Shown here piece after piece: positions 33,968 to 62,000 of a stretch of 64,000 nt of DNA. The notes under the pieces were generated by a model. The model was given only the letters and a program-made list of their open reading frames with translations. It was not told the origin of the DNA and did not search any database. The translations under genes were made by a program, and so were the position numbers. Location of the stretch: the NCBI GenBank assembly GCA_048013815.1, contig CM106585.1, forward strand, positions 21,080,001 to 21,144,000, read 5' to 3'. Source of the stretch: Setoptus koraiensis (lineage: Eukaryota; Animalia; Arthropoda). Position 1 is the stretch's first letter, and each line of letters opens with the position of its first letter.

Positions 33968-34756
33968 TCACTTTTCCTCTTGGTCTTGTGGTTCTTCGCG
34001 CTCATCACCGGCATCAGACGTCCATAATGTAAGATTATCGCGTAACAATTGCATGATCAATGTACTGTCTTTGTAAGAGTCCTCGTTGAGAGTGTCAAGC
34101 TCAGCAATAGCATCATCGAATGCATCCTTGGCTAAACGACAAGCCTTGTCTGGAGAGTTGAGGATTTCGTAGTAAAAGACTGAGAAATTGAGAGCGAGAC
34201 CCAGCCTAATGGGATGCGTCGGTTGCATCTTGTTTTTGCTTATATCAAACGCTTCTTGGTAAGCTTTCTGGGATTCATCAACCACACCATCCCTAGCCTC
34301 TCCGGTTGCTACTTCAGCTAAATATCTGTAGTAGTCTCCCTTCATCTTCAAGTAAAATACCTTGCTCTCTGGATTGGTGGCTTTTGGGATTAAAAATTTA
34401 TCCAGTAAATTCAAAACATCATAACAGATCTCCCTGAGTTCCTTCTCTACCTTTTCGCGGTATTCTCGGGCCATCTGTTGTTTTCGTTCGCTGCCTTCTG
34501 TCTTTTGCTCAATGCTCGAGATAACCCGCCACGAGCTTCTACGTGCTCCCACAACATTCTTGTATGCGACAGATAATAGGTTTCTCTCTTCGTTAGTTAA
34601 TTCTACACCAGTTTCTGTAACCAATTTCATGGCCGACGCCATATCATCGTAACGTTCGGCCTGTTCAGCAAGCTTGGCACGTTGAACTTGTTCATCCTTG
34701 TCCAAATTTGTTGAGGTGGTGGTGGCTGCTGCCGCTGGTGCTGACTCGGTTGCCAT
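33968..34756 (-). CDS. 14-3-3zeta: 14-3-3 protein (zeta-like), copy A, intronless, 262 aa
   Basis: Complete signature motifs [54 protein letters not shown] and [19 protein letters not shown]. Confidence 0.98.
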
Positions 34757-35669: not shown

Positions 35670-35708
<39 letters not shown>

Positions 35709-38263
35709 CACATCAAATTCTGCACCAGATTCTGCTGTGCCATTCCGAGTCCTGAGGCTGCTGCGGCCGACGCTGCTGCTGCTAGTTACAGCAACGAAAA
35801 AAAGAAGGTTCAGTATTGGTTGGCTGCATGAAAAGTTGTTCAGCACTCGAATCTACCACACTCACTTCCACGGTGCATCCAAGCAATGCTTTCCTGCACA
35901 AGTATACATTCTATACATGGGGCTCTTTTTTGTGCTAGGATCGCCACATAAATAGGCTGGGGCACAGATTCGAGACGAGAGGCTCTGACGAAGGCACCGG
36001 CGCACAACTTGTGCAACAGAGCTGTCTCTGTTCGCTACCTGTGCAAGAAAAATAGTCACGCCGAGTCGGCGGCGCATAGAGGGAGCCTTGTATTTCAGCA
36101 ACCCGTAGTGACATAACATTTGAGCGACGCCTGCAGTAGGGACACTGAACTATTCGTGGTTTTAGGGCCGGCTTAGAACATTCTAGTGTATTGTGTAACT
36201 TTTTGCTGGCCACCCGATACACAGACACACACACACACAGACACGCACACACACACACACACACACATACACACACACGCACGCAAACAATGGCAAAATT
36301 CTGCTTCTAGTGTGTGAGTGTGATCGTTTCCTAATGTTCATAACATCGGTGCGGAAAGTTTCCACGAGGGCGGCGCTGCTATGCTTTCTCGATGCCTACT
36401 TGGTGAGTGTAGATTGGCGCAGCACAATGTATGCAATCAAGAACAATGAACATTAAGCGAGACACTGCAGAGTTCGGCGTGCATTCCGAGCGCGTCTAGC
36501 GAGCTTTTTTCGCATCGAAGTTTCGGATATTGGGAAGCGATCACACAATGCAGTGCTGCTTGTCACATTGATGCTTCTGCCGCCACAGTCTGTTCTGCGT
36601 CAATGTTCTGCGTGATCTCCCTGTGATGTCAAAAATGTCGATGCGAAAAAATCCGCTAGGTGCGCTTGTGACGCTGCAGAATGCACAACGAAGCGCAGAG
36701 GTGTCTCGTTGAATGGGGTCCTTTTTTTGGGCTTGAGCACCTAAGCGCACAGAGGGGCAGATGCGCGACAGCTAAATAGCTGACCCACAGCTCTCAATGA
36801 AAGGCTGGCTGTAGCGCAGATACAAACAAGCCCGTCAACGCCAGCTGTAGTGATCGCGTAGGGCAAAAAGAAAGCATGGCAGCGCCGCCCTTGCGGAATG
36901 TTTCATGCACCAATTATTGAGCATGGGACAACAAATCACACGATACACATTAGCCTGCCGACTTTCCTGCAGTCAGAGTGGCCCGCTGGCTGCAGGAATT
37001 GCCAAACGATATGTCAGTGGTCGTGTATCGGGCCTTTCGGTCCAACTGCTGGCTGGAACCTCCTACCTAGCAAACTTTATTTCATGTACAGTGCTATGCA
37101 GCGATTGTTTGGAAACAATTGCAGATGCTCGCACCAACTCTGTCCGCCTGTATGTCTAGCTCTCTTGCGCGAATGTCCTCTGAGAAATAATCGATTCAGT
37201 CAATCTAAATTCAATCGATTGTATAGTGTTAGTGAGTGGGTTGAGGCTGTACCATTGATAATAGCTAGTAGAGGCAGTGGTGCCATAATAATGCATCCCT
37301 TTGGTTAAGCACAAACGAACAAACAGACAGGACACATCACTTTGACGCTAACGCATAACGCACAAGCAAACAGACAGACAGGAAACAACAGCAAGCGAGC
37401 GAGAAGCCAGCGAAGTATGGCCTGCGCTTCACTCTGCGCGAATTCACATCGATACTTTGAGTCTGTGCCACACAGTAGTATAGTAGCTAGCGTATAATGT
37501 TGCACAGCATCGCATAGTTACCAAGCATCATCAAAGGCAGCCCAGGGAACGAGGAAGCGCCCTAAAAATTACCCTTCGTCCGATATTGTGCCCAGACCTT
37601 TTAAACATTATCAGTGACACAAACACGCTCGCATGTGACGTTTCAGGCGGATTGTTGACGCTTGCTAGCTGTTACAAGCCAGCAAGCAAGCTGACTGGAC
37701 CGCTAAATCAATGTTTGGTGCGTGTTTAATGCGAGCCACACCGATGGCGCATCGATGTGTTGTTAATCTGTCTCCTTTTATACTTATAATAGGCTCGCTG
37801 GTATTATTTTACAAGCTAGCGACTCGCGTGATTGGCATTGAGCATTCGCTAATTATTAAACAGACAGTTATTTTCAGTTTCACCAGCGACTACCAGTTGT
37901 TTGAATGTATTTCTTTTTTTTTTTCAAATTGTCATTATGTCAATGGAATTTTCGGCGGCATTAATATCACGCGATATTTGGTGTATCGCGATTATGAGGT
38001 TTAATGGAAACGTTATCTACGAGTTGAAAGCTTTCACTATTATAACCGGTTTCGTTGTGAATAGTAACTGGATAGGCTATTTTGGACAGGGGCGAACTGA
38101 ATATTAGGGCAGGAAATTTGTATATTCTATTTACGATTTTGTTTATTGGTTTTTTTCATAGTATGATTTTCTTTCGCTCTCCTCTTTCAGTAATTTATAA
38201 GGTGACGGGTATGTGTGCGAGAGTAATTTTATAGATGTTTCATCGATTCTCGACAAGTTGTGA

Positions 38264-39061
38264 TCACTTTTCCTCTTGGTCTTGTGGTTCTTCGCGCTCA
38301 TCACCGGCATCAGACGTCCATAATGTAAGATTATCGCGTAACAATTGCATGATCAATGTACTGTCTTTGTAAGAGTCCTCGTTGAGTGTATCCAATTCAG
38401 CGATGGCATCATCGAAAGCTTGTTTGGCCAGGTGACATGCCCTGTCTGGCGCGTTAAGGATTTCGTAATAAAAGACTGAGAAATTGAGAGCGAGACCAAG
38501 TCTGATGGGATGCGTCGGTTGCATCTTGTTTTTGCTTATATCAAACGCTTCTTGGTAAGCCTTTTGTGATTCTTCCACGACATTTGTTCTAACTTCACCT
38601 ATAGCTACCTCAGCTAGATATCTGTAATAGTCGCCCTCCATTTTCAAATAAAATACCTTGCTCTCTGGATTGGTGGCTTTTGGGATTAAAAATTTATCCA
38701 GTAAATTCAAAACATCATAACAGATCTCCCTGAGTTCCTTCTCTACCTTTTCGCGGTATTCTCGGGCCATCTGTTGTTTTCGTTCGCTGCCTTCTGTCTT
38801 TTGCTCAATGCTCGAGATAACCCGCCACGAGCTTCTACGTGCTCCCACAACATTCTTGTATGCGACAGATAATAGGTTTCTCTCTTCGTTAGTTAATTCT
38901 ACACCAGTTTCTGTAACCAATTTCATGGCCGACGCCATATCATCGTAACGTTCGGCCTGTTCAGCAAGCTTGGCACGTTGAACTTGTTCATCCTTGTCCA
39001 AATTTGTTGAGGTGGTGGTGGCTGCTGCCGCTGCGGCTGGTGCTGACTCGGTTTCCATCAT
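38264..39061 (-). CDS. 14-3-3zeta: 14-3-3 protein (zeta-like), copy B, intronless, 265 aa
   Basis: Same motifs as copy A, with 10 internal substitutions and a longer N-terminus. Confidence 0.97.
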
Positions 39062-39440: not shown

Positions 39441-39877
39441 CTGGGTGTAATCGGACTTCTTTCATACTTTCTGTGCACACGCACATAGGCCTTTTGCTGC
39501 GTGTGCACTCTGCACACTCATAGCACATGCTCATGGCGAACGCAGTCTGAATGGTGATTAAACGGCCACATTGTTCGCGCAGGGGGCATGAATTTGGGAG
39601 TTGGTCTAACCACTGCTCGTTTGTATCCCCCTTCATATATGAATTTCATTTTACTATTCACAGGATTAATGGAGCATCTTTCAAATTCTCGCGCTATTCG
39701 TATATAAGCGCTTGAGCCATTCAGCTGCTTTCACTGTAAACTTCATTTCAAGCACACACGCACATCCAGGAAGATCGGGCGCACAAGACCGACAAAATCA
39801 CGCACAAACACCATCTTCAGCTTTGCGTTAACCAAAACCTAGCACAGAAAGTATTGAATAAGTGCGATTACACCCAG
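39441..39877. mobile_element. 437-bp non-autonomous Tc1/mariner-type element (MITE) with 36-bp TIRs and TA target duplication
   Basis: TIRs 39441-39476 and 39842-39877 (CTGGGTGTAATCG..ATACTTTCTGTGC, 4 mismatches), flanked by TA on both sides. The paralogous site upstream of copy A (about 35151-35170) has a single TA and no insert. Confidence 0.88.
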
Positions 39878-40375
39878 TATGAGTTAGCTTAGGTCTGATT
39901 GTGTGTCTGTATCCCAAGAGTGCACTATTTTCTTCTATAGTGTGTGCCGCACACACAGTGTGTGTGTGTGTGTGAGTGTGTGTGTGCGTTGTAACGAACA
40001 GGCAGATGCATATTGAATTGGACACATTGAAGTAAACAGGGAGCTATCTATCATTGGTGGTGAATCAACATTTAAATCTACCCATGCAAACCATAAATGA
40101 ATAAGTCATAGGTTATATTTACTTCAGGATTTCGTTGCAAATATTTTTAAAATGTGATAAACAACACCATCTACATTTGCTTATTACCTCGCGCATAAAT
40201 AGATTTATTTCCATTATTTATCCGTTATCTCAATATACTCGCATGTACATCTTATATTTATCAATTCTGCTGACAGATGTCATGCCGGATCCTCATTGGC
40301 CACCAACGCATGTATAGAAAACACTGGCCAAACTAACGGTTCACAGTATTAAATTACCTCGCCACGACTAATACC

Positions 40376-41122
40376 ATGGCCCTATTGCATCAACCCAGAC
40401 AAATGTCTGCATGTGTAGTTTGCCATTCACGTCTCAGAAATTCAAGTCACCTCCAGCATCAGTATGCATGCTTCAACAACAATCTTCAAAAAATAGACAT
40501 TCTTGGCTTAGCTCAATGCCAGCATGATTACAATCACATTGTCACCAAAAATGATCTTGATGACCACGAACTGGTATCATGTGAACATGTTAGAAGTAGG
40601 ATAAGGGTTGCGGCAGCTGGACTCGTCAGGGCTCTACGGGAACGCAAGACTGATGAGTATGACTATCAAGTTGGTGTCATAAAGGCTGAACAAGAGAAAA
40701 TTCGTTCTAATTTGCAATATGGACGAACATTGATCCAGCGACTACAGAAACAACAAATTCGTGATATGATTGAGGCCAGAAAAAAGGCTAGAGATTTGGA
40801 GAGTGATATAAACAATGCCTACGGATCAAACCCAGCTCAAGGGAAGAAGAGGGCAGCCGAAATGGAGGAGAAAGAAAGGATACGTTTGTACTTTTTAAAG
40901 CGAAAGAAAGAGGCAGAAAAAGAGGCGACCACTCTCAATGTGCCACCCGATCAAATTGATCCAGATAACTTTTTTGAGCCAGCCACTTTCACCCCACCTT
41001 TTCAGGACCTTAAACCACTCATTCATTTCAAACCACAGACTATTATTGTCAATCTCCATGGAACCAACTCTGACAATTCTACACCTATTGTAAAAATCAA
41101 AAAAGAGAGAACGGATACATGA
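40376..41122 (+). CDS. Uncharacterised intronless protein, 248 aa, with a degenerate Zn-finger-like N-terminus and a coiled coil
   Basis: ATG-initiated 747-bp ORF with protein-like composition; CVVCHSRLRNSSHLQHQYAC followed by a charged helical region. Confidence 0.65.
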   Translation: MALLHQPRQMSACVVCHSRLRNSSHLQHQYACFNNNLQKIDILGLAQCQHDYNHIVTKNDLDDHELVSCEHVRSRIRVAAAGLVRALRERKTDEYDYQVGVIKAEQEKIRSNLQYGRTLIQRLQKQQIRDMIEARKKARDLESDINNAYGSNPAQGKKRAAEMEEKERIRLYFLKRKKEAEKEATTLNVPPDQIDPDNFFEPATFTPPFQDLKPLIHFKPQTIIVNLHGTNSDNSTPIVKIKKERTDT

Positions 41123-42295
41123 TACAAAAACTATCAATGATTACCATTGTATATTCTCATGAGGAGATTATTTTGAAAATAAAAAACGAATCATTAGTGT
41201 ACATCTCACGTCAGCATTATTCACCCTGTTATGCGTTATTTTATTCTGAGGTCTGTCTGTACTCAGCAGCTATATCGTGAGTAAACTATAAAGTCTGCAA
41301 AGTCTGCTAATAGCCTTATAAATGGATCGTCAAGGTTCTTCCAGTGACTGCAAAATGATAATATTGCGTCAATTGTCTGCTATATGCTACTTCGTAGCTT
41401 CACTTGCAGTATCAAGATAGCATAATATTTTCAGCGCTAAACTTTTACTGTACTTGTAGACTAGCTTATGCTTCAAAATTAGACTAACAAAGAGAACACA
41501 CTTTCTATTCGCTACGAAGTTTCATATGCTTTTACTGCCTTTGAATTGAAGCTTTCCTTCTCTAGCTCCCTCCATTTGAATGGGCTATATGTTGTTAGTG
41601 AGGCAATTGGATAAATAACAGCCATTCGAATATTAATCTATCTCTGTAACCTCATTTAATGTTGTATTACTGTACCATGTCTCACTCGCTCCCTGTCTCA
41701 CCCGCTCTTTCGTTCTCTCGTTGGCTCTTACTATCCTTTCGTTAAATAAGAATTTAATCAATGTGAGTCAACTGTATCAGTACATTTGATAGAAGGAATT
41801 CAAATTTACTTCGAATGCTGTAATGATTAAAATAGAAATTAAAGAAAACGATGACTATGCTAGAACAGTATAGAGAAAATTCTCATGCTTACCTCGAGGC
41901 ACGGCTTTTTTTAGAGGAGTCAAACTAGGCACAGACACATGTATTTCGGCCAACAACGGCAACACGAACGACAACGGTGAAACAATAATAAACAAAACAC
42001 AATTATTTGATCTCCTGGCCAGTGCAACAGTTAGATGTCAAAAATTAAACAATACTCAGATTAAAAGAACACACCAGACAGATTATGTTGTATCGAAGAT
42101 ACAATGTATAATGAGGCCGAAAACGGATATTTGAATAAAAAAACATAATTATGGTAATAACAATAATAATAATTAGTCACATAGGCACACTTGACAAAAT
42201 TAGATTGAATTTACTTTTTTGAACCCAGTGTACACATAGTTATTGTTGAGTATTGCCATTTAGCCCCAGCTCAGGACAAGGATTTATTAATCAAG

Positions 42296-45200
42296 ATGAA
42301 TCAAGCTCTTCAACGTCGCCACGAGCAAATAGAGCGTTGGAAACAAAATGAGGCTTCTATCGACCTTTCATCATCTAAAGAATCAGTTAGCAAAGATAGA
42401 AAAACTAGAATCTTTTCAAACAAGGACAGCATCCGAAGGAGGGGAGGAAACAGTGTTAAATTCTCGAATTCGACATTATTTTTAGCTGCCTGCGCTAATG
42501 GTGACCTGGAGGAATGTGAAAGATTACTTAAAAATAAGTTGGTTGATATCAACACCACAACTAACGACGGGCTATCGGGCCTGCATGAGGCCGCTATTGC
42601 AGGTAACAGAAAAATGGTAGAATACCTGTTGAAAAATGGAGCTCAAGTAGATTGTGCAGACAACGAAGGATGGACACCATTGCATGCTGCCGCCAGTCTC
42701 GGTCAAAATGAGGTAGTTGAGGTTTTGTTGTTGAATAATGCAGACCCTACACTTGTCAATTGTGAGAATGTGCTCGCTTATGATCTAGCTCGCAACGATA
42801 CCGTTAGGACAATGATAGGCTCTGAATTGAGGGAAGAAAATCTGGAATTACTGAGGTTGCAAGAGAGGCGTCTAATAGAGCACGATATTTCAAGATGGTT
42901 GAAGACAGGTATTTATGACGAACGATCTCATCCCATCACAAATGCCAATGTTTTACACGTATTGGCGTCCAAAGGACACATTGAACTCATGAGTAGACTA
43001 CTCGAATCTGACGTAATAAGGAGACAAATAAACATAGATGCCCAAGATACAGAGGGATTCACCCCGCTCATAGCAGCAGCTTACTGGGGAAATACGGAGA
43101 TCGTTCAGTTACTTATTGAGCATGGAGCGAACGCTTTAATACAATCTAATCAAGGCTACAGGTTTGACGACTTTCTTGAGAGCTCATTTGCAGCACTCAT
43201 GAAAGACTTGTTCTACACCAGACAGCTAGAAAGAAAACATGACCTCATCAAGGTCTCAAACCGTGCAACTAGAATAAATAATTCGAATGCTCTACACGAT
43301 CAAGACAATAATTCGCTTATGGAAAATAGCTTTTCAGCTGTTCTACCGACATCAAAGTTTGCTTCCGCGAACGACCTAGACAACGATATAACAATTACTC
43401 TAAAGAAGCCACAAGTGCCACCACATTCGCCCTCAACTACAAAAGCCTCATTACTCTCTCCACCATCATCTCCGACAGCAACCATTGGTGATATATACAT
43501 CAGGCAATTGCAGAATGACTCTATACAATCTTCCCCAGGAAGCAAAAGCCCGGCAAGTGAAAGTGAAACTCAGAGGAGAGCTCACGCCAAACGCGTCCGA
43601 GAAACAAGGCGCTCAACTCAAGGCATATCTGCAGCGGATGTTTTAAAAGCCAAGGCTAATAGTGACCACCTAAGTCAGAGCAAATCTTCCGGTAAGTTCT
43701 GCTGTCATTCATAACGAAATTTGTGCGATCATAAATCTATGTGCTCATAATATCAAGTTCAAACATTGTAACTGATTCGTTTTTCAACTCCTCGACTAAC
43801 TTAAATGAATTGTGAACATTGGAAATTTACATCATCTGGCGCTCAATAACATATTGGAAATCATTTTCCAACTGAATATGGATCATTAACTATGATTTCT
43901 AGCTTCCTTCGATTCACTAGATGCTCAAAATGACAGCAACAGTAGAAAAGTAAGTTTTTCAAAAAAAAAAAATCAACTATTGAGTCACTTTTGAGTTTCT
44001 TTGCGATTGTTTTTATTACAACTGTAAATATTTGGATTCATCATCAAATACTAGATAGACCGAGGAATATATTAAGCTTTGGTTTATCTTACTGACCTTC
44101 TTTTCCTCCTCTGTTTCATAAGAAAGTCGCTTCATTGCTTACGAAAATGAAGTTTCATATATGCTAAACTCAATTCAATTGAGGATGGAGCATGTAGCAT
44201 TCAGTTTAAGCTATGAACATTTCCCTAACTGATTATGTCTAACTAATCTTTAGCACAAGCCTCAGATCTTATTCGCTATACGTCATACGCATGCTAGATG
44301 ATAATTTCTTTCTGTACCTCTCAAAGTTTCTACCGCTACATTTTAACTTGTATTTATCAATGAGTCTCAAATAGCGAACGACAATCGAGGAGACAGAGAG
44401 GAATAGTATTCATGCATGTTTATGTGTCATCTTGAGGCATTATTTTCGAGTTGAATGTAATGAGAACATACTTTCTACTTCCTTCTTGTCAACAGTGGAA
44501 AAAACTATTTTGTGCTTTTACGAGAAAAGACACAAGATTTTCTGTCTCATCTACGTTTAGCGCTCTGATGGGCCTTTAGCTGATAAGTCTTAATCAGTTA
44601 TATAATGATACACAAGATCGATAGTTATACTACGAGTCGCAGTGCCCTTATGTGCGCATATAAACTAGATCCCTCATAGACTTCCAACTTTCTCCCCATA
44701 CCGCTAAAAATATATATACATCTATATGCGTAGATAGAGGATGCATCTGTTGAAAAAGGAATATAAAGTAGACTGAGCAACTCGGCGACTCGTTGAATCT
44801 CTAGACTATTAATGCTCGAGGCTTTGTGTCTACATAAACATTGGTATTGATATACTAATGTATGTGTATACATTACAAAAACAGAAATGGGGTAAATTTC
44901 TGTTGCGTTTGAAGCTAGAAAATCCTTGATGCTCAAAATCATATTTCTTGGTTGAATTCCTATGTCATACTACTAATTATCATAGACATTAGAAAGTAGT
45001 GAAAGAGTGCTTTCAAATTTCCCAGTGATACCAATCAGAGTTTAAGTATTTTCATTTATCCTTCTTGATAGATATTGCGGCAACATCAAGTCGGTTCTAT
45101 ATTTGTTTGACATGCCTTGAAGAATCAGAAAAAGAAAAATCAATCATAGAATTCACAATAATTCAATAATATATAGTTATGAACAAGTGACATTATTATT

Positions 45201-46376
45201 ATCATGTCCTTTCATAATCCATACCTATCGGCCTCTAGGCCCTCATCATCTTTCACAAGATCCTCTCGTTCCTCTAAACGAAGTGATCCAAGTATTAATA
45301 AGAGTAGTTATCTTAGTAGATCAAGAAGTTCCATGGCATTGGGGGCTGGCAGTCAATCATTATTGTCCACTCAAACACCATCTTCAGCATACCATTTAGA
45401 TACTAGCTCAGCTTATGTTCCTGGTAGCTGGAACAGATCATCATCGACAAACAGATTGACCAGACAAAACAGTTCTAATGTGACACCTTCAGCACTGACC
45501 ACTTTTGTTCCAGGCTCAACTGGGCCATCGACTTCACAGTCAAGTTTGCTGAATCATAATCAGCATATACAATCTAGATCGCAAATATCTACTGTTAGTT
45601 TTCTACACAATCTATTCTGTCTAACGTTCAACTTGATGCACATACTATATTGCTTAAGTTTTTTTTTTCGGTTCCTTCATTAATACTTTCTTTGTTACAT
45701 CTGAATATTACATAACACCTATAATAATCTGATCAGAACTAACTCAATTATTATTTTCTTCCCTGGCTAAACTTTTTTATTATATCAAAATCACAATTGT
45801 TTACAGCCGTCTGGAGCACTCACCAGAGGAGCGAATGATTCAGTCACTAACCAACAATCAGCCAGTGGGGTTAATTCACGATCATCGTCTGTGTTATCAT
45901 TAGATCCTTCATCACATCATGATGATCATAGTAGTGTAAATGGAGACGAGAATTTAGATTTGAACAGTCTACAAAAGAACCAATCAAAGAGTGATAGTCG
46001 TAATCGGCTGCATCCAGATAAAAATCATTCGTCATTATCAGAGGATATATTGGATAGTGATCAGACAATTTTCAGTCGTTCAATCAGTTTAGAGTCATCT
46101 TTATCATTGGCCGAGTCATTAAACCAAAGCGAATTGAGGCGTTCTTATAAAGAATTATTAATAGAGAATGAGAAGTTAACAAAACTTTTGAAAGAGTATG
46201 AAGAAATGGAGAAGAAACGAAATCTCGATTGGACTAAAGAGAAACGACAAATGCAGAGAAAAATAAGTGAACTTGAGGAGGAGAATAAACAATTGGAACA
46301 ATGGAAGCACGAAAGCCAAAGATTAAAAGATGAAAACAGTTCATTACTGCGCGTCATAAGTAAAATTTCTAAATGA
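42296..46376 (+). CDS. PPP1R12A: Myosin phosphatase targeting subunit (MYPT/PPP1R12, Mbs); exons include 42296-43691, about 43903 or 43921 to 43949, part of 45204-45593, and 45807-46376; middle junctions uncertain
   Basis: N-terminal MyPhoNE-like RRHEQIERW, SVKF..LFLAACANGD, ankyrin repeats, inhibitory site RETRRSTQG, and C-terminal leucine zipper QRLKDENSSLLRVISKISK. Donors at 43692, 43950 and 45594; acceptor at 45806. Confidence 0.9.
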
Positions 46377-46611
46377 GATTCTTGACTATCTAGATACAAA
46401 TAAACAAGAACAAATAAATATATAGATACCGATGCACTGATCATAACAGATAAACTCATAATTGATTAATATTGAGCGCCAATCACATAGAGGAAAGAAC
46501 AATAATCTAATAAATTTGAGTCACTATCTATAGACAAATGATTCGATTCTAGCTAGCTACTTTGTCACTCATGAGTTTACAGATTTATTGTGCCAATAAA
46601 ACTGGGTGTAA

Positions 46612-46960
46612 CTGAACTTGTCACTTTCTTTGAACACGCATATGCGTTGTGTCTCCCACTGCCAAGGACATTCTAACATTCATATAGCATTGTTTTCCGA
46701 AAATTATCAATTTGGATCGATTACATCTATGCACATATTATTCATGTGAGATATCTTCAGAAGAAGTTGTGAAATCTCGCGATAGAGGCACACATGAGAG
46801 CTTGGCTAGTTAAAACTTGTTACTTTCTATAAACACTCACATGGAGAGTGTTTTTATCTGCCAAGGACATTCAAATTGCAACATCGCATTGTCTTTCGAC
46901 AATTATCAGTTGGGATCGATTAAATCACTACACCATATTCATACCAGATATCTCTACTAT
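46612..46960. repeat. Diverged tandem duplication with a period of about 200 bp
   Basis: AACTTGTCACTTTCT/AACTTGTTACTTTCT, GCCAAGGACATTC (46661 and 46860) and AATTATCA..TGGATCGATTA/GGGATCGATTA recur about 199 bp apart. Confidence 0.7.
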
Positions 46961-47195
46961 GGAAGATGAACCACTAGTCACTAGTGATTAGTGCTGTGAA
47001 TAGTAGAATAATATTCATGGATGAAGGGGGTGCGAACAAGAAGCTAGTTGGAGCGACTCCCAAGATTATACCCCCCTGCGTGAAGTAAGCTAGCCAAATC
47101 TAGTCTCCATAATACTGCATTTGCCATGAGCATGCGCTATATGTTCAGTTTCCACCCAGCGGAAGACCTATGTGCGTTTGACACTCAACATACGG

Positions 47196-47395
47196 ATCAG
47201 TAATTTTTTTCGCAATCACATTATTTACGGCAACATTTCGAACCCATAGCATCGCTTCAATTTTGAAACACCACCCACACCAGCCGGAGCTAACAAAATT
47301 ATATTGAAGCATACATATATATATTTAGATACGTACATTTATATAAATATATATATCCATAAACACAATAATATTATTATTGCTTATCAATTATA
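47196..47395 (+). promoter_or_regulatory. Inverted copy of the 14-3-3 5' leader upstream of the chimeric UGPase; arthropod initiator-like TCAGT at 47197-47201
   Basis: Aligns to the reverse complement of about 34757-34975 (TTTTTTCGCAA..TATTTACGGCAACATTTCGAACCCATAGCAT..TATTGAAGCATAC..AAACACAATAATATTATTATTG..TATCAATTATAATG). Confidence 0.85.
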
Positions 47396-48889
47396 ATGGC
47401 AACCGAGTCAGCACCAGCGGCAGCAGCCATCAACACCTCAGCAAATTCGGACAAGGATGAACAGGTTCAACGTGCCAAGCTTGCCGAACATGCCGAGCGT
47501 CGCGATAGTATGGCGTCGACCATGAGATTGATTGCAGAGAACATCTCCATGGATTCGGACTTCAAAAAGCTATACGACAAGTACCTTCGTCAAAGAAACG
47601 CCCCTCAGATTGATTGGGACAACATCAAGCCCCCATCAGAAGATGCCGTCATTTCCTATTCTAATCTCAGCAAGCCTCACGCTAATGAGATCAAAGCTAT
47701 GCTCAACAAGCTCGTGGTTGTTAAACTCAATGGAGGTCTCGGTACGAGTATGGGCTGTACCGGCCCCAAGTCCATTATTCAGGTTCGCAGTGACCTTACG
47801 TTTTTAGATCTGACTGTTAAGCAAGTCGAAGAGTTGAACAAAAAATATGATTGCGACATCCCATTAGTTCTGATGAACAGTTTCAACACAGACGTCGAGA
47901 CAAAGAAAATACTGAGAAAATATCAGCATCATCGATGTAAAATCTACACTTTTATGCAGAGCAAATTTCCTCGCATCAACAAGGAAACTTTGATGCCTGA
48001 ACCGGGAGAGTTTTATCCACCAGGTCACGGTGACTTTTACGAATCGTTCTGCCGATCGCATCTATTAAGTGATTTTATCCAAGAGGGACGCGAGTATTGC
48101 TTCGTGTCTAACATTGATAATCTGGGTGCAAATGTTGACTTGAATATACTCAGTAAGTTGCTCAAGGGTGATGGTTCGACATCGCCGTCCTTCGTCATGG
48201 AAGTTACCAACAAAACAATGGCCGATGTCAAAGGTGGTACTCTTATAGAATACGACAACAAACTCAGGTTGTTGGAGATAGCTCAAGTTCCCAAGGAGCA
48301 CATTGAAGAATTTAAGAGTGTGAAAAAATTCAAGATTTTCAATACCAACAATTTATGGATGCGATTGAAGAGCATAGAATATCTGGTCACTAATGATAAA
48401 TTAGACATGGAGATAATAGTCAACCCAAAACATCTCGATTCAGGAGTTGATGTCATTCAACTCGAAACCGCTTCTGGTGCAGCTATGAAAGATTTCGAGC
48501 GGGCTCTCGGTATCAACGTTCCACGAAGTCGTTTCCTACCAGTCAAGAAGACCGACGATTTACTTGTTATAATGTCCAATTTGTACACCCTGGAAAATGG
48601 AGTACTAACTATGAGTCCTTACAGGGCATTTCCAACAGTGCCTCTAGTCAAGCTCGGGGATACCCATTTCTCGAGAGTTAGAGAATTCCTAGCAAGATTT
48701 GCCTCCGTGCCGGATCTTCTCGAATTGAACCACTTGACTGTTTCTGGTGATGTTACCTTCGGAAAGGGTGTCTCGTTGCGAGGAACAGTGATAGTGATTG
48801 CAAACCATGGCGACAGAATCGATATTCCGTCCGGCGCCACTTTAGAGAACAAAATTGTTTCCGGAAACCTACGTATACTAGATCATTAA
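47396..48889 (+). CDS. UGP2: Chimeric UTP--glucose-1-phosphate uridylyltransferase with a 14-3-3-derived N-terminus (aa 1-48), intronless, 497 aa
   Basis: UGPase motifs KLNGGLGTSMGCTGPKS, YPPGHGD, SNIDNLGA, DVKGG, FNTNNLW, QLETA, RFLPVKK and C-terminal ENKIVSGNLRILDH. The first 48 codons match 14-3-3 copy A at 127/144 nt. Confidence 0.95.
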   Translation: MATESAPAAAAINTSANSDKDEQVQRAKLAEHAERRDSMASTMRLIAENISMDSDFKKLYDKYLRQRNAPQIDWDNIKPPSEDAVISYSNLSKPHANEIKAMLNKLVVVKLNGGLGTSMGCTGPKSIIQVRSDLTFLDLTVKQVEELNKKYDCDIPLVLMNSFNTDVETKKILRKYQHHRCKIYTFMQSKFPRINKETLMPEPGEFYPPGHGDFYESFCRSHLLSDFIQEGREYCFVSNIDNLGANVDLNILSKLLKGDGSTSPSFVMEVTNKTMADVKGGTLIEYDNKLRLLEIAQVPKEHIEEFKSVKKFKIFNTNNLWMRLKSIEYLVTNDKLDMEIIVNPKHLDSGVDVIQLETASGAAMKDFERALGINVPRSRFLPVKKTDDLLVIMSNLYTLENGVLTMSPYRAFPTVPLVKLGDTHFSRVREFLARFASVPDLLELNHLTVSGDVTFGKGVSLRGTVIVIANHGDRIDIPSGATLENKIVSGNLRILDH

Positions 48890-48902
48890 CTTTTTGTTAT
48901 AT

Positions 48903-48915
48903 TTTATTGAATAAA
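48903..48915. terminator. Back-to-back polyadenylation signals TTTATT-G-AATAAA between convergent genes
   Basis: AATAAA on + at 48910-48915 and on - at 48908-48903, inside the 65-bp gap between the two stop codons. Confidence 0.6.
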
Positions 48916-48954
48916 AGAGTTTACATATTTAATGATTACGTTAATGATATATGT

Positions 48955-49677
48955 TTAGAGGAGCGGATTGTTTTCACCCTCGAAGTCGACTGGATTGGGA
49001 ATGACTTGCTTGAGACCGTCCTCTGCTCCCAGAACAAGTTTCTTGCGTGTCTTATCTAAGTTTTTGCCTTTGGTTACTGCGCTGCCTGGTTTCGACCGGG
49101 TCTCTCTGAGTGCTCGCTTCGCACGAGAATTCTCCTGCTTGGCAGCTGGCACTTTGATGCTAACACTGATTCTCTTTTTAACAACAGACGACGGAGGTTG
49201 AGTTTTTTTCTTGTTTGGTGTGCCTGTTGCTTCTTGCGGTGCTACATGGCCTGTGCTGGCTATGTAGGAGCACGTCTGACACGTCCAATCTATTGATATT
49301 TCCGAGACGTCCGGTTTGTCTATGGACGAATCTGGAATGGCTGGTGAGTGGCATTTTTGATGATAACCTTGTTCGCACACCTCACAGATAACTATTTGAT
49401 TAGGAGCCTCTGAGATGCCGCCCTCACATACTGTGCAGATGATATGTTCTTGTTGTAGATGCTTCAACGACAATTGTGTATGAATGTCCGCTAAATCGGT
49501 CCACGCCTCTAGGTCGTCCTCGTAGCGAACGAGACATTTTTTCTTCGGCTCGTTTAATTCAATCAGGTGGCACCTGTAGTAGAGACTGTCTGAAGCCCAT
49601 TTGGCGAATACATGTTTCACACCGGACTTTTTGCCTTTTTTGAGGCTCTCCTTGAGCAGTTTCAACGATGCGGGCAT
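48955..49677 (-). CDS. Pcl: Truncated Polycomb-like protein (Tudor + PHD1 only), 240 aa
   Basis: VFAKWASDSLYY...CLVRYEDD..AW (Pcl/MTF2-type Tudor) and CTVCEGGISEAPNQIVICEVCEQGYHQKCH..WTCQTC (Pcl PHD1, including the SEAPN motif). Confidence 0.82.
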   Translation of the reverse strand: MPASLKLLKESLKKGKKSGVKHVFAKWASDSLYYRCHLIELNEPKKKCLVRYEDDLEAWTDLADIHTQLSLKHLQQEHIICTVCEGGISEAPNQIVICEVCEQGYHQKCHSPAIPDSSIDKPDVSEISIDWTCQTCSYIASTGHVAPQEATGTPNKKKTQPPSSVVKKRISVSIKVPAAKQENSRAKRALRETRSKPGSAVTKGKNLDKTRKKLVLGAEDGLKQVIPNPVDFEGENNPLL

Positions 49678-50301
49678 GTTGTCTATTATTGTTATTATTA
49701 TTATTTACTATTATTATTGCTATTATTATTCAACGATTTATATTGTATCATTTATTTGAGCAATCTGCTTATGCTAACATTTCGCAACTGCACAACGCAA
49801 CTGTGTGTCACACAAAGTTTTGAGCGAAAATGGCGCCCGGTCGCGCGAAAGCACCATGCCTGTTGCTAACCGGTGCGGGCAAAGACAAACTGCCGAACGG
49901 TATTGTGGTAATGCACGCGATTTGCAGCAAGATAGAGGGGGAAAGAAATGTATCGACGAACAAAAAGCGAAAAAGTTCGCCCCGGTCTATAGATAGCGCT
50001 TGACTCGTTTTTTTGTTTCAATTTAGTTCGATCCAATCATTAGGTGGAGCGCAGGCGCCAAATTTATATTCCACTGGGAATTTAAATCAGGGGGCGCGAA
50101 ATCAGTTTTTATTTTGTTGTTGGTGGTGGTGGTTCTCTTTGTTTTTTTTTTTGGTGACTTTCTGAACATTTTTTGATGTTTTTTTGACATGTTTTTTAGC
50201 TATAGATCTCTTTAGAATTTTATTTTACATTGATAGCATTTCTCTGCGTGTTGATGTTAAATCTAAGACTATTTATGAAGAATGCTAATAGATATTCGGA
50301 A

Positions 50302-54373: not shown

Positions 54374-54842
54374 TATATAATGATAATGATATAGTTATAT
54401 ATTTATTCTATAGTGTATAAATATGTTTATATTTATACCACTGTCTATCTATATAACCAATGTAGGCAACAGGGTTAGCCAACACTGTTGAAAGACTTTG
54501 AGGAAAGGATTCCTCGGTCGCTGGCTATACGCAAGATTTTTGTTTTTGTTTAGCTCTACGTTCCAGCTCTACGTTGTGTGTTGTTTCCAATGTGCGTCTC
54601 ACTTTTATGTGCCTCTTCAGCGCCATTCCTCTTGCCTTACGTGTCTGTGCCTGTGTGTGTCTAGCTGTGCGTCTCTCTATCTGTGCCCATCGAACTATGT
54701 GTGTATTCGAATTACTTACAACTATACATATGGGTGCAATCTTGGCAATATTATCATTACAACTACTACTATATTACCACTGTTATTTCTTGCAGTTGAA
54801 CAACGTCAACAAACACACAAGCACACACAAACACACACACAA

Positions 54843-54881
<39 letters not shown>

Positions 54882-57800: not shown

Positions 57801-59234
57801 TTGTGCCTTAGGTGACTTTGCCTTGCAAGAGAGAGAGAGAGAGGCGTCTATCTAAACATTTGCGTCTTTGAAAGTCGGTTGAAAGCAGATTCTGACAGAA
57901 TCTTTGTTTCACCAACTGACTGGCTGAACAGCAAGCAGCAAATGTGATGCCAGCCAGCCAGCCAGTCTGGCCCGCACAACAGCAGTCTCGGCAGCTAATC
58001 AGTCAGCTGATACAGTAAGATGATTAGACATACTTTCATATTGTGTGCTGAACATAAGTGTGAATAATAAGTAAATGAAATGAAATGAATTAGCTGAATT
58101 GATTAATCAGCTACCACTGCTGCCACCAAATAAACTGCTAATAAATATCCGAGCGTCACATGCAAGCTCTATGAGCGCGCACACACTCGACATGCAAGAT
58201 TTGTGTCTATATCACGTATTTAGCCAGAGACGTGTGGCGGCTGGATATTTCTAGACAACTGACTACTGCTAACAACAATGCTCAACTCACCTCGTTGGCT
58301 GCTGATTCCCTGCGTGTGTCCTCCTCTTTCCATTTGTGTACAGGTGCCTGCCAGGTCTGATAGGCGAGAGAGTGTACAGTGATACAGTACAGGTGAAGGT
58401 GAGCGTCAATATCAGGCAATCATCTATCTCTTGTTGTTTGGTTGTTCAATCAATGATACTATTAATAGTGCTAGTTGTAACAATTTGAGCTGCAGCTACC
58501 GCGGTTGTTGCTGTTGTGGTTGCTGTTGTTGTTGTTGTTGTTGTTGTTGTTGCTGCTATCCAATCAAAAGTTTGTGTGCGCTACCAAGGGAGATAGATCC
58601 AGTAGTTGCAATCCAGTTTTATTATTATTTCCAATCTTTCTCACCAATGACTTTTAGCTTGTCCTAGACGCCCGACAAGAGCCACTCACAACTGCCAGAG
58701 TGTGCTATTGATAATAATAATAATGAACCAATTGTTTTTGTCGTGGTTGCTATTGCAAGGTTTGGAGGTACGTTATGCGTCGTCAAATCAGTCGTTGTCA
58801 GTTAAATGGTTGCTGTTGTTGCTTGCTGTTGTTGTATCATGCTGGCTTGTCGCGCGTGAGTGTGTGACTTAAACACAATGCATGCGATACGTACAGATAG
58901 ATGGATGTGTATTTTATTATTAATACAATTATTACAATTTATTATTATTATTATTATTATTATTATCGGGTCGTGTTGTGTGTTCACAGATAGACAACAA
59001 AGAGAGCAGTTGGTGTTGTTGTTGTGGTTGTTCGTCAAAAGAGAGCAACTATCTAGCCATGTACAGTATATATACTATACAGCAGCATATATACACTACT
59101 GCTGGTGGTAGTTGGAGCTGTTGTTGTATCGTAGAACTTAATGGACAACAACAAACGAACGAATCGAACAACAACAAAAACGAATCGAACACAACGAATT
59201 TTGAACCAGCAGCAGCAGTGTTGGTTCTATTTTC

Positions 59235-59267
<33 letters not shown>

Positions 59268-59751
59268 GTAGCAGCAGAGCCAGCCGTAGTTTTTGCATCA
59301 ACTTCGCCCGTTTCTGCCTGCCCCCTCCCCCCCAGTTCTATTCCCCGTGTGAGCAACAACAACAACAACAACAACACACTCTCTGGAGTTCATTTTTTGA
59401 CACACACACCAGGGCTGCAAAGTTGCTCGCACTGACACTCGCGCACACACACACAAAGACACAACAACAGCAACAACAGCAACAACAGCAACAGCAGCAG
59501 CAACAACAGCAGCAACAGCAACAACAGTGAAGTTTCGTCAGCTAGCAAACATCACAAGACAAAATGGAAACAAAGGTCAGCTGATTTGACAAACGGACAC
59601 GGGGACGGAAAGGAGGACAAGTGACAGACGGTCGGCTCTCAGCAACGCCAACGCTGGCAGCACTAACGACGCCAGACACAATGGCGCAGTCGCCGTTCGC
59701 TGGTTCGCTCGGCTGTGCGTTCGAAATCGAATTCTCTGCTCTGTCGGTTGC

Positions 59752-59809
<58 letters not shown>

Positions 59810-62000
59810 CTGGCAAAGCAGTTTGTTCGACGCATTGCCAGTGTAGCTCTGCCAGTGTAACACTGCCAGTGTAACGCGCACAGCGCCTATAATGGCCCAA
59901 GCACCAGCCAAGGATGCGGGGGAAGGCAGGGGGCCCGGGCGAGCCAGTGCCAGCGCACAGCATTTGTCAGTTGGCAGCGCTAACTGTTAGTGACTGACAC
60001 AGTGTTAGCGCTGGCCATTGTTGCCGTGTGCAGCCAACGGTACAACATCAACATTGCACCAATGTGCACCACTGGTGGCACAGCGAGCCCCATCGAGTCG
60101 CCTCTGACAGTTGTGACTCACAACAATTGTGAGTGGCGCAACTGAATTCGTGCGCAACATTCGGCACTCTGTTCAACAGACAGTTTGTTATTTGGAACAA
60201 CATTCAGTCTGTGCGCGCAAGCTGCGCAACAAAGTAGAGCCGCGCACAGACTGGGCCTCCCATTTAGCGCGGGCCTCGAGTATCGCAACAGTCGCCCAAA
60301 TATCCCATTTACGCGTATATGTGGGCACCGCGTTACGCGCAAATGTGTGTCAGTGGTGGCCGAGAGTGGCCCAGTTCGTGCCAGCGCTAACTGGCGCGAT
60401 TAATATCTAGCCAAGCACACGAGCGACGGGCCCAACGCTACGCGATCCCACTTCGCCTGGCCGTTCGGGCGCCCCAATTCGCAGCTCGCAACTGGCAGTT
60501 CGCAGCTCGCGATTCGCAGTTCGCGATTCGCAGCTCGCAACTGGCAACACGGAACAGATCGCGCTGAACGAGCGCCGATGATCAGATGATCGCGTGGGCG
60601 CCCCACGTCGCACTGGTGCTGCCATTGCGGGGACCTTCTCGACGCCACTTAATGGTGCGCTTGCAACTGTTCCAAATGACGTCTTGAGGACGAATCGGTG
60701 GCGCTGTTGCTTCGCTGTTGACGCCGTAGCAATGGTTTGGATATAGTTTCAGCCCCGACTGTCGACTGTGTGTGTGTGTTACTTGCACTCTTACCGACGA
60801 CGTTTATCTTTGCTCTCTCTCTCTCTCTCGCCCTGCTCACAATACCACAGCTGATAACTGTAGTGGGCCTAATATGCATTGTCTGCTGATAAGACCGTCA
60901 CTGTTATACTTGTCCCATTGTTAGCTCGCCAGGGTTAGCTTGCCAACGAGGCAACGCAAACGCCAACAACAACAACAACAACATTAGCAGAAACTAGAAA
61001 ATATTTCTCCGTTGCTGTCGCTGCTGTCGTCGTCGTTTATCGTGATTCTGGCTTACACTGCGAATTGTCTATACACTGATTGACAATACTACACTGTCTG
61101 CTGCTCTGGCTGACTTTCGACACAACAAAGGCACCATTCGGTCGGACCAACCTCGCAAACAGCTGATTGTGTTGTTGTTGTTATTTTAGTTGGTAGTAGC
61201 TGTCGGTTGTGTGCAGCGACTTGGTCGCCATTATTTGCTGTTGTTGTTGCTGTTGTTGCTGCTGTTGCTGCTGGTGCCACTGCTACATTACGCAATAGTG
61301 GAGCTACAATTGTTCTAACTCACTTATCTCCAGCGACTGGCAAAGCCATGCCAGCAGACATTTGCAATAATATGATGTGTGCGTAGCCGTTAAAAAAGAT
61401 AAACTGAGCGAGATATTTTGAGCATACAAGCCAACACATCGCAGCACGACGTATACAGATACAAGCGAACGATAGAGGCAGGAAAAAAGAATAAAAAGAA
61501 ATGAAAACCATCAACTGACAACCTTGTCCAACTCAACAATTTAATGATGATGCAAATGATGCAACAATGATTGCCGTATGGGTGTTGTCTTTGTTTCTAA
61601 CGCAACAGCAACGGCAACAGCACCAGCCACGACAACAACAACAACAACAACAACAACAATAGGTCACTTCTTTTTTCGCAATTCAGTTTCAGAAATTTGG
61701 AAATTTTCAGCTGGCAAAAAACTCCATCTCTCCTCGAAAATTATAGATGGCACAAGCGAATAAGCGAATTGTAACCGTAGCGTAACACGAATTTTGTCTA
61801 ATACTCACTCTCCTCTCGCCGTCATCATCGTCGTGGTCGTCGGATGACTTTGCTTTGTATCATCTGTGTGGTTCTATATAAAGGTGGCCATTTTAACCTT
61901 GTAACCTAGAAAACAAGTTCGCTTCTTATCTCATTGTCCGGCTCATTGCAACAGCGCGCCAAGACACGCATAGAAACTGGAAATCGTATCTCTTCCTCCA
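53400..62000. repeat. Microsatellite-rich noncoding region ((TA)n, (CA)n, (CAA/CAG)n, (TTG)n), probably the DOR 5' introns and regulatory region
   Basis: For example (TA)n at about 54337-54371, (CA)n at about 54815-54876, (CAA/CAG)22 at 59462-59527 and (GT)n at about 59761-59807. Similar (CA)n tracts at 35181-36282. Confidence 0.85.
60481..60550. repeat. 7-bp minisatellite GCRRYTS, about 10 units
   Basis: GCAGCTC GCAACTG GCAGTTC GCAGCTC GCGATTC GCAGTTC GCGATTC GCAGCTC GCAACTG GCAACAC. Confidence 0.85.

What the first reader, a model, noticed from the sequence alone, without database searches (positions are those of the whole stretch)
47396..48889. Chimeric gene: 14-3-3 N-terminus fused in frame to an intact UDP-glucose pyrophosphorylase
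Seen: residues 1-48 ([48 protein letters not shown]) align without gaps to 14-3-3 copy A, 12.6 kb away on the opposite strand (127/144 nt). The frame continues with no intron or stop into UGPase (DFKKLY..IDWDNIKPP onward), with all catalytic motifs and the C-terminal oligomerisation tail present. Established: animal UGPases have a helical N-terminal segment of about 50 aa before this point, and 14-3-3 helices 1-2 form half of the dimer interface. Inference: a length-matched helix swap created a new gene, which could change UGPase regulation or let it dock onto 14-3-3 monomers, linking signalling to UDP-glucose supply. I know of no described 14-3-3::UGPase fusion.
Basis: partly seen in the sequence, partly recalled or inferred. 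Interest (0 to 1): 0.92.

Follow-up and report, generated by a model that had tools for sequence, protein, structure and literature searches.

The report
14-3-3 gene start grafted onto UGPase
A mite's UDP-glucose pyrophosphorylase gene has acquired the promoter region, start codon and first 48 codons of a nearby 14-3-3 gene; the chimera is real, transcribed and shared with a sister species, but the borrowed peptide looks like a passenger, not a working 14-3-3 part.

Summary
ORF 47396-48889 (+, 497 aa) is uninterrupted. Its first 143 nt match the start of two intact 14-3-3 genes on the minus strand (89% and 85%), and a complete UGPase follows.

- The copied piece also carries about 190-410 nt of 14-3-3 5' flank, so a promoter and 5'UTR came with the start codon.
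- The closest relatives have short UGPases (438-472 aa) that start at the equivalent of internal ATG 47549. Nothing was swapped out; the 14-3-3 piece is an addition.
- The piece lies at a synteny breakpoint between two ancestral gene blocks.

A sister species (L001) has the same chimera with only 29 codons of 14-3-3, after an in-frame 66-nt loss. RNA-like contigs from three public runs cover only gene bodies. They cross the junction in two runs without splicing and carry fusion-specific bases from 47235 onward, and 47396 is the first ATG in that stretch.

The peptide evolves with dN/dS near 1. It has changed 7 of 30 residues that do not vary in any relative's 14-3-3 examined.

Verdict: a real chimeric gene made by promoter and start-codon capture, and a new member of a known kind. 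The proposed 14-3-3 docking role is not supported. First-stage notes report similar 5'-end captures elsewhere in this genome; these are unchecked.

The parts
46987..47395 (+). Copied 14-3-3 5' flank (promoter and 5'UTR) now upstream of UGPase
   Evidence: 47196/47205-47395 is 78-82% identical to the flanks of copies A and B, and 46987-47180 is 73% identical to 39670-39476. The run X7 contig 47235-47413 has zero mismatches and carries fusion-specific bases. There is no ATG in 47235-47395. A TATA-like 16-mer at 47330-47345 is shared with copy A and with L001, and copy B has a diverged version.
47396..47538 (+). 14-3-3-derived coding piece: start codon, N-terminal extension, helix 1 and most of helix 2 (48 codons)
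   Evidence: 127/143 identical to copy A and 126/149 to copy B. dN/dS is 0.96 and 0.80. The start context has A at -3 and G at +4.
47539..47548 (+). 10-nt linker between the end of 14-3-3 homology and the ancestral UGPase ATG; with the last base of the piece (47538) it reads in frame as E-N-I-S
   Evidence: Homology to both parents ends at 47538. Absent in L001, where the 14-3-3 piece abuts the ATG directly.
47549..48889 (+). Native, orthologous, intronless UGPase (446 codons plus stop) starting at the ancestral ATG (M52)
   Evidence: Pfam UDPGP. 91% amino-acid identity to L001 with dN/dS 0.03. Relatives start at the equivalent M. The downstream PHD and DOR neighbours are conserved in L001-L005.
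33968..34756 (-). Intact 14-3-3 copy A (262 aa), a parent of the piece
38264..39061 (-). Intact 14-3-3 copy B (265 aa); its 5' flank (to about 39670) gives the longest match to the copied flank
42296..46553 (+). MYPT-like gene (ankyrin exon, middle exon, PRKG1_interact exon, 3'UTR): the last gene of the ancestral 14-3-3 block, ending just before the breakpoint
   Evidence: Pfam. The same neighbour is present in L001. The MYPT / ORF / 14-3-3 arrangement is conserved in L006. Contigs end at 46482-46553.
48955..49677 (-). Convergent PHD-finger gene, a conserved downstream neighbour that marks UGPase as the native copy

Best explanation
A copy of about 550 nt from the 5' end of a 14-3-3 gene was placed in inverted orientation directly in front of the native UGPase gene. 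The copy holds promoter-proximal flank, 5'UTR, start codon and 48 codons. It sits at a point where two ancestral gene blocks were joined: 14-3-3/ORF/MYPT on one side and UGPase/PHD/DOR on the other. This happened before the window's species and the L001 species split. UGPase is now transcribed from inside the copied 14-3-3 flank. The first AUG of that mRNA is the 14-3-3 AUG, which reads in frame into UGPase, so the main product should be UGPase with a 51-residue N-terminal extension (29 residues in L001). The lasting function of the graft is a promoter, leader and start codon for an essential enzyme that lost its own upstream region. The peptide is a tolerated passenger, kept only in frame and free of stops. 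Shown here: the anatomy, the shared origin, the synteny break, transcription across the junction, and relaxed protein-level constraint. Inferred: the position of the promoter, translation from 47396, and the copying mechanism (for example a templated insertion during break repair).
For: - Homology includes 5' flank as well as coding sequence.
- RNA-like contigs in runs X5, X6 and X7 cover only gene bodies and show zero depth over 46554-47234. X5 contig 47347-48880 and X7 contig 47400-47714 cross the junction with no joints. X7 contig 47235-47413 matches the fusion flank exactly.
- There is no ATG in 47235-47395, an in-frame stop lies at 47369-47371, and the start has a strong context.
- Protein P0001 on L001 (475 aa) has the same chimera. 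It differs by a 6-nt and a 66-nt indel, both multiples of three. The 66-nt one is flanked by CCA microhomology.
- Relatives have short UGPases with stops just upstream of their ATG.
- dN/dS of the piece is 0.96 and 0.80 against the parents, versus 0.10 between the parents and 0.03 for the UGPase body.
- A TATA-like motif and the start context are conserved in the fusion, copy A and L001; copy B has a diverged version of the motif.
Against: - The library type of X5-X7 is not on record, so calling them RNA rests on the coverage pattern alone.
- The X6 contig starts at 47527, 22 nt before the internal ATG, so a downstream start site or a short isoform is possible.
- The 5' end of the X5 contig (47347-47395) probably follows the parent's 5'UTR through a 46-nt stretch identical in fusion and copy A. 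Only X7 therefore shows the fusion's own leader, and at low depth (3.9).
- There is no protein-level evidence.
- The piece is about half as diverged between the two species as the synonymous sites of neighbouring genes (pS 0.157 against a median of 0.34, 13th percentile of 29-codon windows). This hints at some sequence constraint or gene conversion that the passenger reading does not explain.
- Outside a 16-mer, the copied flank cannot be aligned in L001.
Confidence: 0.72

Rival explanations
1. Leader only. The 14-3-3 piece supplies transcription and a 5' leader, but the enzyme made is mostly the ancestral short form. It would be started at ATG 47549 (or the in-frame ATGs 47513 and 47522) from a start site inside the piece or by leaky scanning.
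For: The X6 contig begins at 47527 at full depth. All close relatives make do with the short form. The peptide shows no amino-acid constraint.
Against: X5 and X7 contigs run through the piece at depths like the gene body. 47396 is the first AUG and has A at -3 and G at +4, while 47549 has T at -3. Both indels that separate the two species' pieces keep the frame, and neither piece has a stop. That pattern is expected if the upstream AUG is used.
Confidence: 0.18
2. Functional 14-3-3 module. Helices 1-2 of 14-3-3 give UGPase a new interface that docks onto 14-3-3 monomers or changes regulation.
For: The piece covers helix 1 and most of helix 2, which form part of the 14-3-3 dimer interface (established knowledge). 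The frame is kept in two species. AlphaFold2 predicts a helix at residues 18-49, though with pLDDT of only 42-71.
Against: dN/dS is about 1. There are 7 changes in 30 residues that do not vary in any relative's 14-3-3 examined. From my recollection of the 14-3-3 zeta structure, these include the equivalents of Tyr19 and interface Asp21. L001 has lost the second half of helix 1 and all of helix 2. There is no Pfam 14-3-3 hit. The phosphopeptide groove (helices 3, 5, 7 and 9) is absent.
Confidence: 0.06
3. Assembly artefact: a chimeric join of 14-3-3 and UGPase reads.
For: A 46-nt stretch (47384-47429) is identical in the fusion and copy A and could mislead an assembler.
Against: Downstream of that stretch the piece differs from both parents at 16 or more positions, spaced closer together than a 31-mer, so it is a locus of its own. 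Independent runs hold 0.99 of the sampled words (X2). Contigs from other samples cross the junction. A different species has the same junction type.
Confidence: 0.02

Closest known systems
Chimeric genes born by partial gene duplication with promoter and first-exon capture (Drosophila jingwei, Sdic and Quetzalcoatl types; cited from my own knowledge)
   Same: An intact parent gene persists. A 5' fragment with regulatory sequence and a start codon is fused in frame to another gene. The new gene is transcribed and the recruited peptide evolves quickly.
   Different: The recipient here appears to be the native, syntenic copy of an essential housekeeping enzyme rather than a spare duplicate, so the graft replaced its regulation instead of creating an extra gene. 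The fragment lies at a synteny breakpoint. Neither parent had been reported in such a fusion in the papers searched.
Canonical animal UGPase (UGP2 type, 508-541 aa in ticks, Sarcoptes and trombidiform mites)
   Same: Full UDPGP catalytic core, nucleotide-binding loop and C-terminal tail. 63-71% identity.
   Different: It lacks the canonical N-terminal segment of about 55 aa, as do all its close relatives, and carries an unrelated 51-aa extension of 14-3-3 origin instead.
14-3-3 zeta-type proteins (PF00244)
   Same: The first 48 residues are 77% identical to the genome's own 14-3-3 copy A.
   Different: Only helices 1-2 are present. There is no ligand groove, and constraint on residues that do not vary in relatives is lost. 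It is not a 14-3-3 protein.
Plant UGPase as a reported 14-3-3 client
   Same: Papers on plant UGPase mention 14-3-3 alongside it (titles and term counts only, papers not read).
   Different: That is a non-covalent client relation through the 14-3-3 groove, which is absent here. There is no genetic fusion.

Membership tests
UDPGP / UTP-glucose-1-phosphate uridylyltransferase (PF01704) | Full-length match to the family profile above the curated cut-off | tested here: met
   605 bits against a cut-off of 22; residues 55-462 cover profile positions 3-413 of 413.
UDPGP / UTP-glucose-1-phosphate uridylyltransferase (PF01704) | Conserved nucleotide-binding loop and all columns invariant across arthropod UGPases | tested here: met
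   The KLNGGLGTSMGC loop at residues 110-121 and every invariant column of the 64-sequence alignment are present.
UDPGP / UTP-glucose-1-phosphate uridylyltransferase (PF01704) | Orthology to the single UGPase locus of relatives (same neighbours) | tested here: met
   PHD and DOR genes lie downstream in the window and in L001-L005. Whether a second copy exists elsewhere in the genome could not be tested.
UDPGP / UTP-glucose-1-phosphate uridylyltransferase (PF01704) | Enzyme activity | not testable with these tools
   Only purifying selection was shown: dN/dS 0.03 against L001.
14-3-3 (PF00244) | Nine-helix domain recognised by the family profile | tested here: not met
   No 14-3-3 hit in the fusion at E up to 0.01. 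The parents score 359-364 bits.
14-3-3 (PF00244) | Purifying selection on the helix 1-2 residues that do not vary in relatives | tested here: not met
   7 of 30 residues changed, dN/dS 0.8-0.96, and most of the stretch deleted in L001.
Chimeric gene by partial duplication with promoter capture | Intact parent retained, and the fragment includes 5' flank and start codon | tested here: met
Chimeric gene by partial duplication with promoter capture | Transcript runs from the captured flank across the junction, unspliced | tested here: met
   X7 contigs 47235-47413 and 47400-47714, X5 contig 47347-48880, no joints. Caveat: the runs' library type is inferred from gene-only coverage.
Chimeric gene by partial duplication with promoter capture | Promoter activity of the captured flank, and translation from the captured AUG | not testable with these tools
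   Inferred from first-AUG position, start context and frame conservation.
Chimeric gene by partial duplication with promoter capture | Persistence beyond one genome | tested here: met
   The same chimera occurs in L001, a different species: synonymous differences of 0.31-0.64 per site across neighbouring genes.

The most novel reading that the evidence does not exclude
The graft may be one instance of a recurrent process in this intron-poor mite genome. Inverted copies of gene 5' ends (promoter, 5'UTR, start codon) would be inserted at rearrangement breakpoints and re-equip the neighbouring gene with a promoter. First-stage notes from other windows of the same genome describe three look-alike cases (URM1, RPL23A-NOC2L, DDX5/OGDH). 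None has been checked. If they hold, promoter capture by 5'-end duplication would be a systematic route by which a compact, rearranging genome rescues genes cut off from their regulatory DNA.
Probability: 0.25. Interest if true: 0.7.

Novelty: new member of a known kind. Interest (0 to 1): 0.42.

Why it matters
- The case is unusually clean: both parents are intact and close by, the ancestral state is visible in relatives, a sister species shows later trimming, and transcripts cross the junction.
- The recipient is what appears to be the native copy of an essential sugar-nucleotide enzyme. It therefore shows how a housekeeping gene can survive losing its upstream region by borrowing another gene's front end.
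- It also shows that the UGPase N-terminus tolerates loss and replacement in this lineage.
- It does not, on present evidence, link 14-3-3 signalling to UDP-glucose supply.

Tried and rejected
1. Staggered-break inversion of the MYPT segment. The two copies of the piece flank 39671-46986 as inverted repeats, which fits that model's geometry. However, the distant relative L006 has MYPT, ORF and 14-3-3 in the same relative arrangement, so the segment was not inverted. No ELM2 or myosin gene, the ancestral upstream neighbours of UGPase, is present in the window or in L001. Rejected in its simple form.

2. Strong nucleotide-level conservation of the piece between species. Against the UGPase body (pS 0.61) the piece (pS 0.157) looked extreme, with binomial P of 8e-5. 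But MYPT and DOR have pS of 0.31-0.36, and 13% of 29-codon windows in the neighbouring genes are as low. Downgraded to a weak hint.

3. Gene conversion from a slowly evolving parent. 14-3-3 synonymous sites are saturated against L006, so the parent is not unusually conserved at DNA level. The 14-3-3 gene of the L001 species, which is needed to test conversion, could not be found among search hits or cluster members.

4. A hidden upstream exon for a canonical UGPase N-terminus. tblastn with four canonical N-termini found nothing in the window or in L001-L005.

5. AlphaFold2 on the N-terminus. Residues 1-17 are disordered and 18-49 form one low-confidence helix. The alignment has only two sequences there, so this is uninformative.

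6. Transposon involvement. The 140-nt direct repeat at 46615-46756 and 46814-46953 has no other copy in the window.

7. Organism identity through run accessions in the literature: no hits.

8. Raw RNA runs X15-X23 were not used. Other runs under the same label hold none of the sequence, so I took that label to be a host or generic one. This was a guess.

Full report
**Observation**

The window has an uninterrupted 497-codon ORF at 47396-48889 on the plus strand.
- Its first 143 nt match the first 143 nt of a 14-3-3 gene at 34756-34614 (minus strand, copy A). The match is 127/143 without gaps, E 5e-50.
- The same stretch matches a second 14-3-3 gene at 39058-38910 (copy B) at 126/149 with one 6-nt gap.
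- Both 14-3-3 genes are intact, intronless and full length by Pfam.
- In the chimera Pfam sees only a complete UDPGP domain at residues 55-462, E 7e-182. Every column that is invariant in 64 arthropod UGPases is retained.

- Homology to both parents continues upstream of the ATG to 47196-47205 at 78-82%.
- Against copy B it continues through a second block, 46987-47180 matching 39670-39476 at 73%.
- The copied unit is therefore about 550 nt: roughly 410 nt of flank and 5'UTR plus 48 codons, in inverted orientation relative to the parents.
- A TATA-like 16-mer about 50-65 nt before the ATG and the start context (A at -3, G at +4) are shared by the chimera and copy A. Copy B carries a diverged version of the motif.

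**Ancestral state of UGPase**

- The best database match, P0001 (475 aa, about 90% identical), begins with the same 14-3-3-type N-terminus.
- The next 30 or more relatives (70-77% identity) are 438-472 aa. They start at a methionine 2-12 residues before the conserved GFxxLF block, which is the position of M52 (ATG 47549) here.
- Three of these proteins were traced to four loci (L002-L005). Each gene has an in-frame stop 15-18 nt upstream of its ATG.
- tblastn with four canonical N-termini finds no upstream exon within 6 kb.
- These genomes carry very long single-ORF genes, such as a myosin of about 1,860 aa, so they are intron-poor and the calls are credible.
- Canonical arachnid UGPases (508-541 aa) do have about 55 more residues.

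The lineage had therefore already lost that segment. The 14-3-3 piece was added in front of the old start codon, not swapped for a helix of equal length.

**Genomic setting**

- Downstream of UGPase, a convergent PHD-finger gene and a DOR-family gene are conserved in the window, L001 and L002-L005. This identifies the gene as the native, orthologous UGPase.
- Upstream, the distant relatives have ELM2 and myosin genes. The window and L001 instead have a MYPT-like gene (ankyrin and PRKG1_interact domains; 42296-46376). No ELM2 or myosin is found anywhere in the 64 kb.
- In another distant relative (L006), MYPT, a small ORF and 14-3-3 are neighbours in the same relative arrangement as in the window.
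- The piece therefore sits exactly at the seam between two ancestral blocks, 14-3-3/ORF/MYPT and UGPase/PHD/DOR.
- A simple inversion of the MYPT segment with staggered breaks does not fit, because that segment is not inverted.
- A copy templated from the 14-3-3 gene about 8 kb away during break repair, or a later local inverted duplication, would fit. Both are inference.

**Sister species**

- L001 carries MYPT, the chimera, PHD and DOR in the same order.
- Its 14-3-3 piece is 29 codons and abuts the UGPase ATG directly.
- Relative to the window it lacks 66 nt, bounded by CCA on both sides, and has 6 extra nt in the alanine run. Both differences are multiples of three.
- One origin before the split, followed by an in-frame deletion, is much more parsimonious than two independent captures of the same gene start at the same target.
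- The two species are well separated. Synonymous differences per site are 0.31-0.36 in MYPT and DOR and 0.61-0.64 in UGPase and PHD.

**Transcription**

I could lay contigs of four public runs on 46400-49800.
- Runs X5, X6 and X7 come from one study and have no library type on record. They cover three gene bodies and give zero depth over 46554-47234 in all three, which is what RNA gives and DNA does not.
- X5 has a single 1,536-nt contig at 47347-48880.
- X7 has contigs at 47235-47413, 47384-47429 and 47400-47714.
- No joints were reported, so nothing is spliced out.
- The X7 contig ends fall exactly where a 31-mer graph must branch, on either side of a 46-nt stretch (47384-47429) that is identical in the chimera and copy A.
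- The X7 contig 47235-47413 has no mismatch, so it carries the chimera's own bases at 47357-47358 and 47383.
- The X5 contig has three mismatches. One is C>A at 47383, which is the copy A base. The flanks of the chimera and copy A differ at just three positions in 47347-47395, so I infer that the X5 contig switches into the parent's 5'UTR at its last 49 nt.
- Solid conclusions: chimera-specific sequence from 47400 to 48880 is contiguous in RNA-like contigs (X5), and the chimera's own leader from 47235 is present (X7, depth 3.9 against 3.9-8.2 in the gene body).
- The X6 contig starts at 47527. This is unexplained and keeps a downstream start site possible.
- There is no ATG in 47235-47395, so 47396 is the first AUG of such a transcript.

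**Constraint on the borrowed peptide**

- Against copy A the piece has 13 non-synonymous and 4 synonymous differences, dN/dS 0.96. Against copy B dN/dS is 0.80.
- The two parents differ with dN/dS 0.10, and the UGPase body differs from L001 with dN/dS 0.03.
- In the relatives' 14-3-3 proteins examined, the 30 residues from DKDEQ to LVTE are essentially invariant. The chimera has changed 7 of them.
- L001 has deleted everything after the first half of helix 1.
- Between the two species the retained 27-29 codons again give a ratio of 0.92.
- The peptide is thus free to change as long as the frame stays open. This argues against a preserved 14-3-3 interface.
- AlphaFold2 gives a disordered start and one low-confidence helix, with almost no alignment depth there. 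I draw nothing from it.

**A caution I applied to myself**

- The piece is only 15% diverged between the species, and at first this looked far below neutral (P = 8e-5 against the UGPase synonymous rate).
- Measured against the other neighbouring genes it falls at the 13th percentile of 29-codon windows.
- It is a hint of mild sequence constraint around the start, or of occasional gene conversion, and nothing more.
- 14-3-3 itself is saturated at synonymous sites against a distant relative.
- The parent gene of the L001 species could not be retrieved.

**Mechanism proposed**

A rearrangement cut UGPase off from its old upstream DNA. A copy of the 14-3-3 gene's front end at the junction now supplies promoter, leader and start codon. 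Ribosomes starting at the first AUG would make UGPase with a 51-residue extension (29 in L001) that is neutral baggage.
- Promoter capture with a translated passenger peptide: 0.72.
- The piece serves only as an untranslated leader: 0.18.
- A working 14-3-3 interface: 0.06.
- Assembly artefact: 0.02.

**Comparison with what is known**

- Chimeric genes formed by partial duplication that bring a promoter and first coding segment to another gene are well known in Drosophila and elsewhere (my own knowledge).
- This is a new member of that kind, with an unusual recipient: what appears to be the native copy of an essential enzyme.
- A full-text search found no natural 14-3-3::UGPase fusion, only engineered chimeras and papers on plant UGPase that also mention 14-3-3.
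- First-stage notes from other windows of this genome describe three similar 5'-end captures. I could not check them. If they are real, the phenomenon may be systematic here.

**Organism**

- The nearest named UGPases are from trombidiform mites at about 71%.
- Notes on other windows of this genome speak of a gall or plant-feeding mite.
- The species was not established here.

Noticed in passing
window 33968-39061: The two tandem 14-3-3 copies are nearly identical over their first 48 codons (dS 0.03) but diverged over the rest (dS 0.32), with dN/dS 0.10 overall. This suggests a gene-conversion tract at the 5' end. It matches the other first-stage note on this window (s1-303168).
   Followed up: partly
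window 47145-47312 (-) and 34864-35034 (+): A 55-56 aa ORF lies antisense in the copied 14-3-3 flank and in the copy A flank. The homologous pair begins MLQYNFVS (the copy A version has two extra leading residues, MCMLQYNFVS). It may only reflect the duplication; no evidence for coding was sought.
   Followed up: no
window 46615-46756 and 46814-46953: Two direct copies (73%) of a 140-nt element lie in the spacer between MYPT and the copied flank. There are no other copies in the window.
   Followed up: partly
window 35100-36400, 39950-39990, 54800-54880, 59230-59810: Long (CA)n/(TG)n microsatellite tracts, including between the two 14-3-3 copies and in the copy B upstream region.
   Followed up: no
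window 42296-46553: MYPT-like gene in at least three exons (ankyrin ORF 42296-43714, 45204-45683, and 45891-46376 with a PRKG1_interact domain). It is one of the few spliced genes in an otherwise intron-poor stretch. Its adjacency to 14-3-3 is conserved in a distant relative (L006).
   Followed up: partly
window 48386-49414 (run X9): A run from another study and another organism label holds contigs 97-98% identical to the UGPase 3' part and the PHD gene. This is probably a close strain or sibling species. It does not reach the junction.
   Followed up: no
window 48880-48990: Contigs of the convergent UGPase and PHD genes stop 4-9 nt before the UGPase stop codon and 22-33 nt inside the PHD ORF end in the runs whose contigs reach these ends. 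Probably coverage decays at transcript ends in an AT-rich 3' region; an AATAAA lies at 48911.
   Followed up: no
L002-L005 and proteins P0002-P0037: A whole clade of mites has UGPases of 438-472 aa that lack the canonical N-terminal segment of about 55 aa found in ticks, spiders, Sarcoptes and trombidiform mites.
   Followed up: partly
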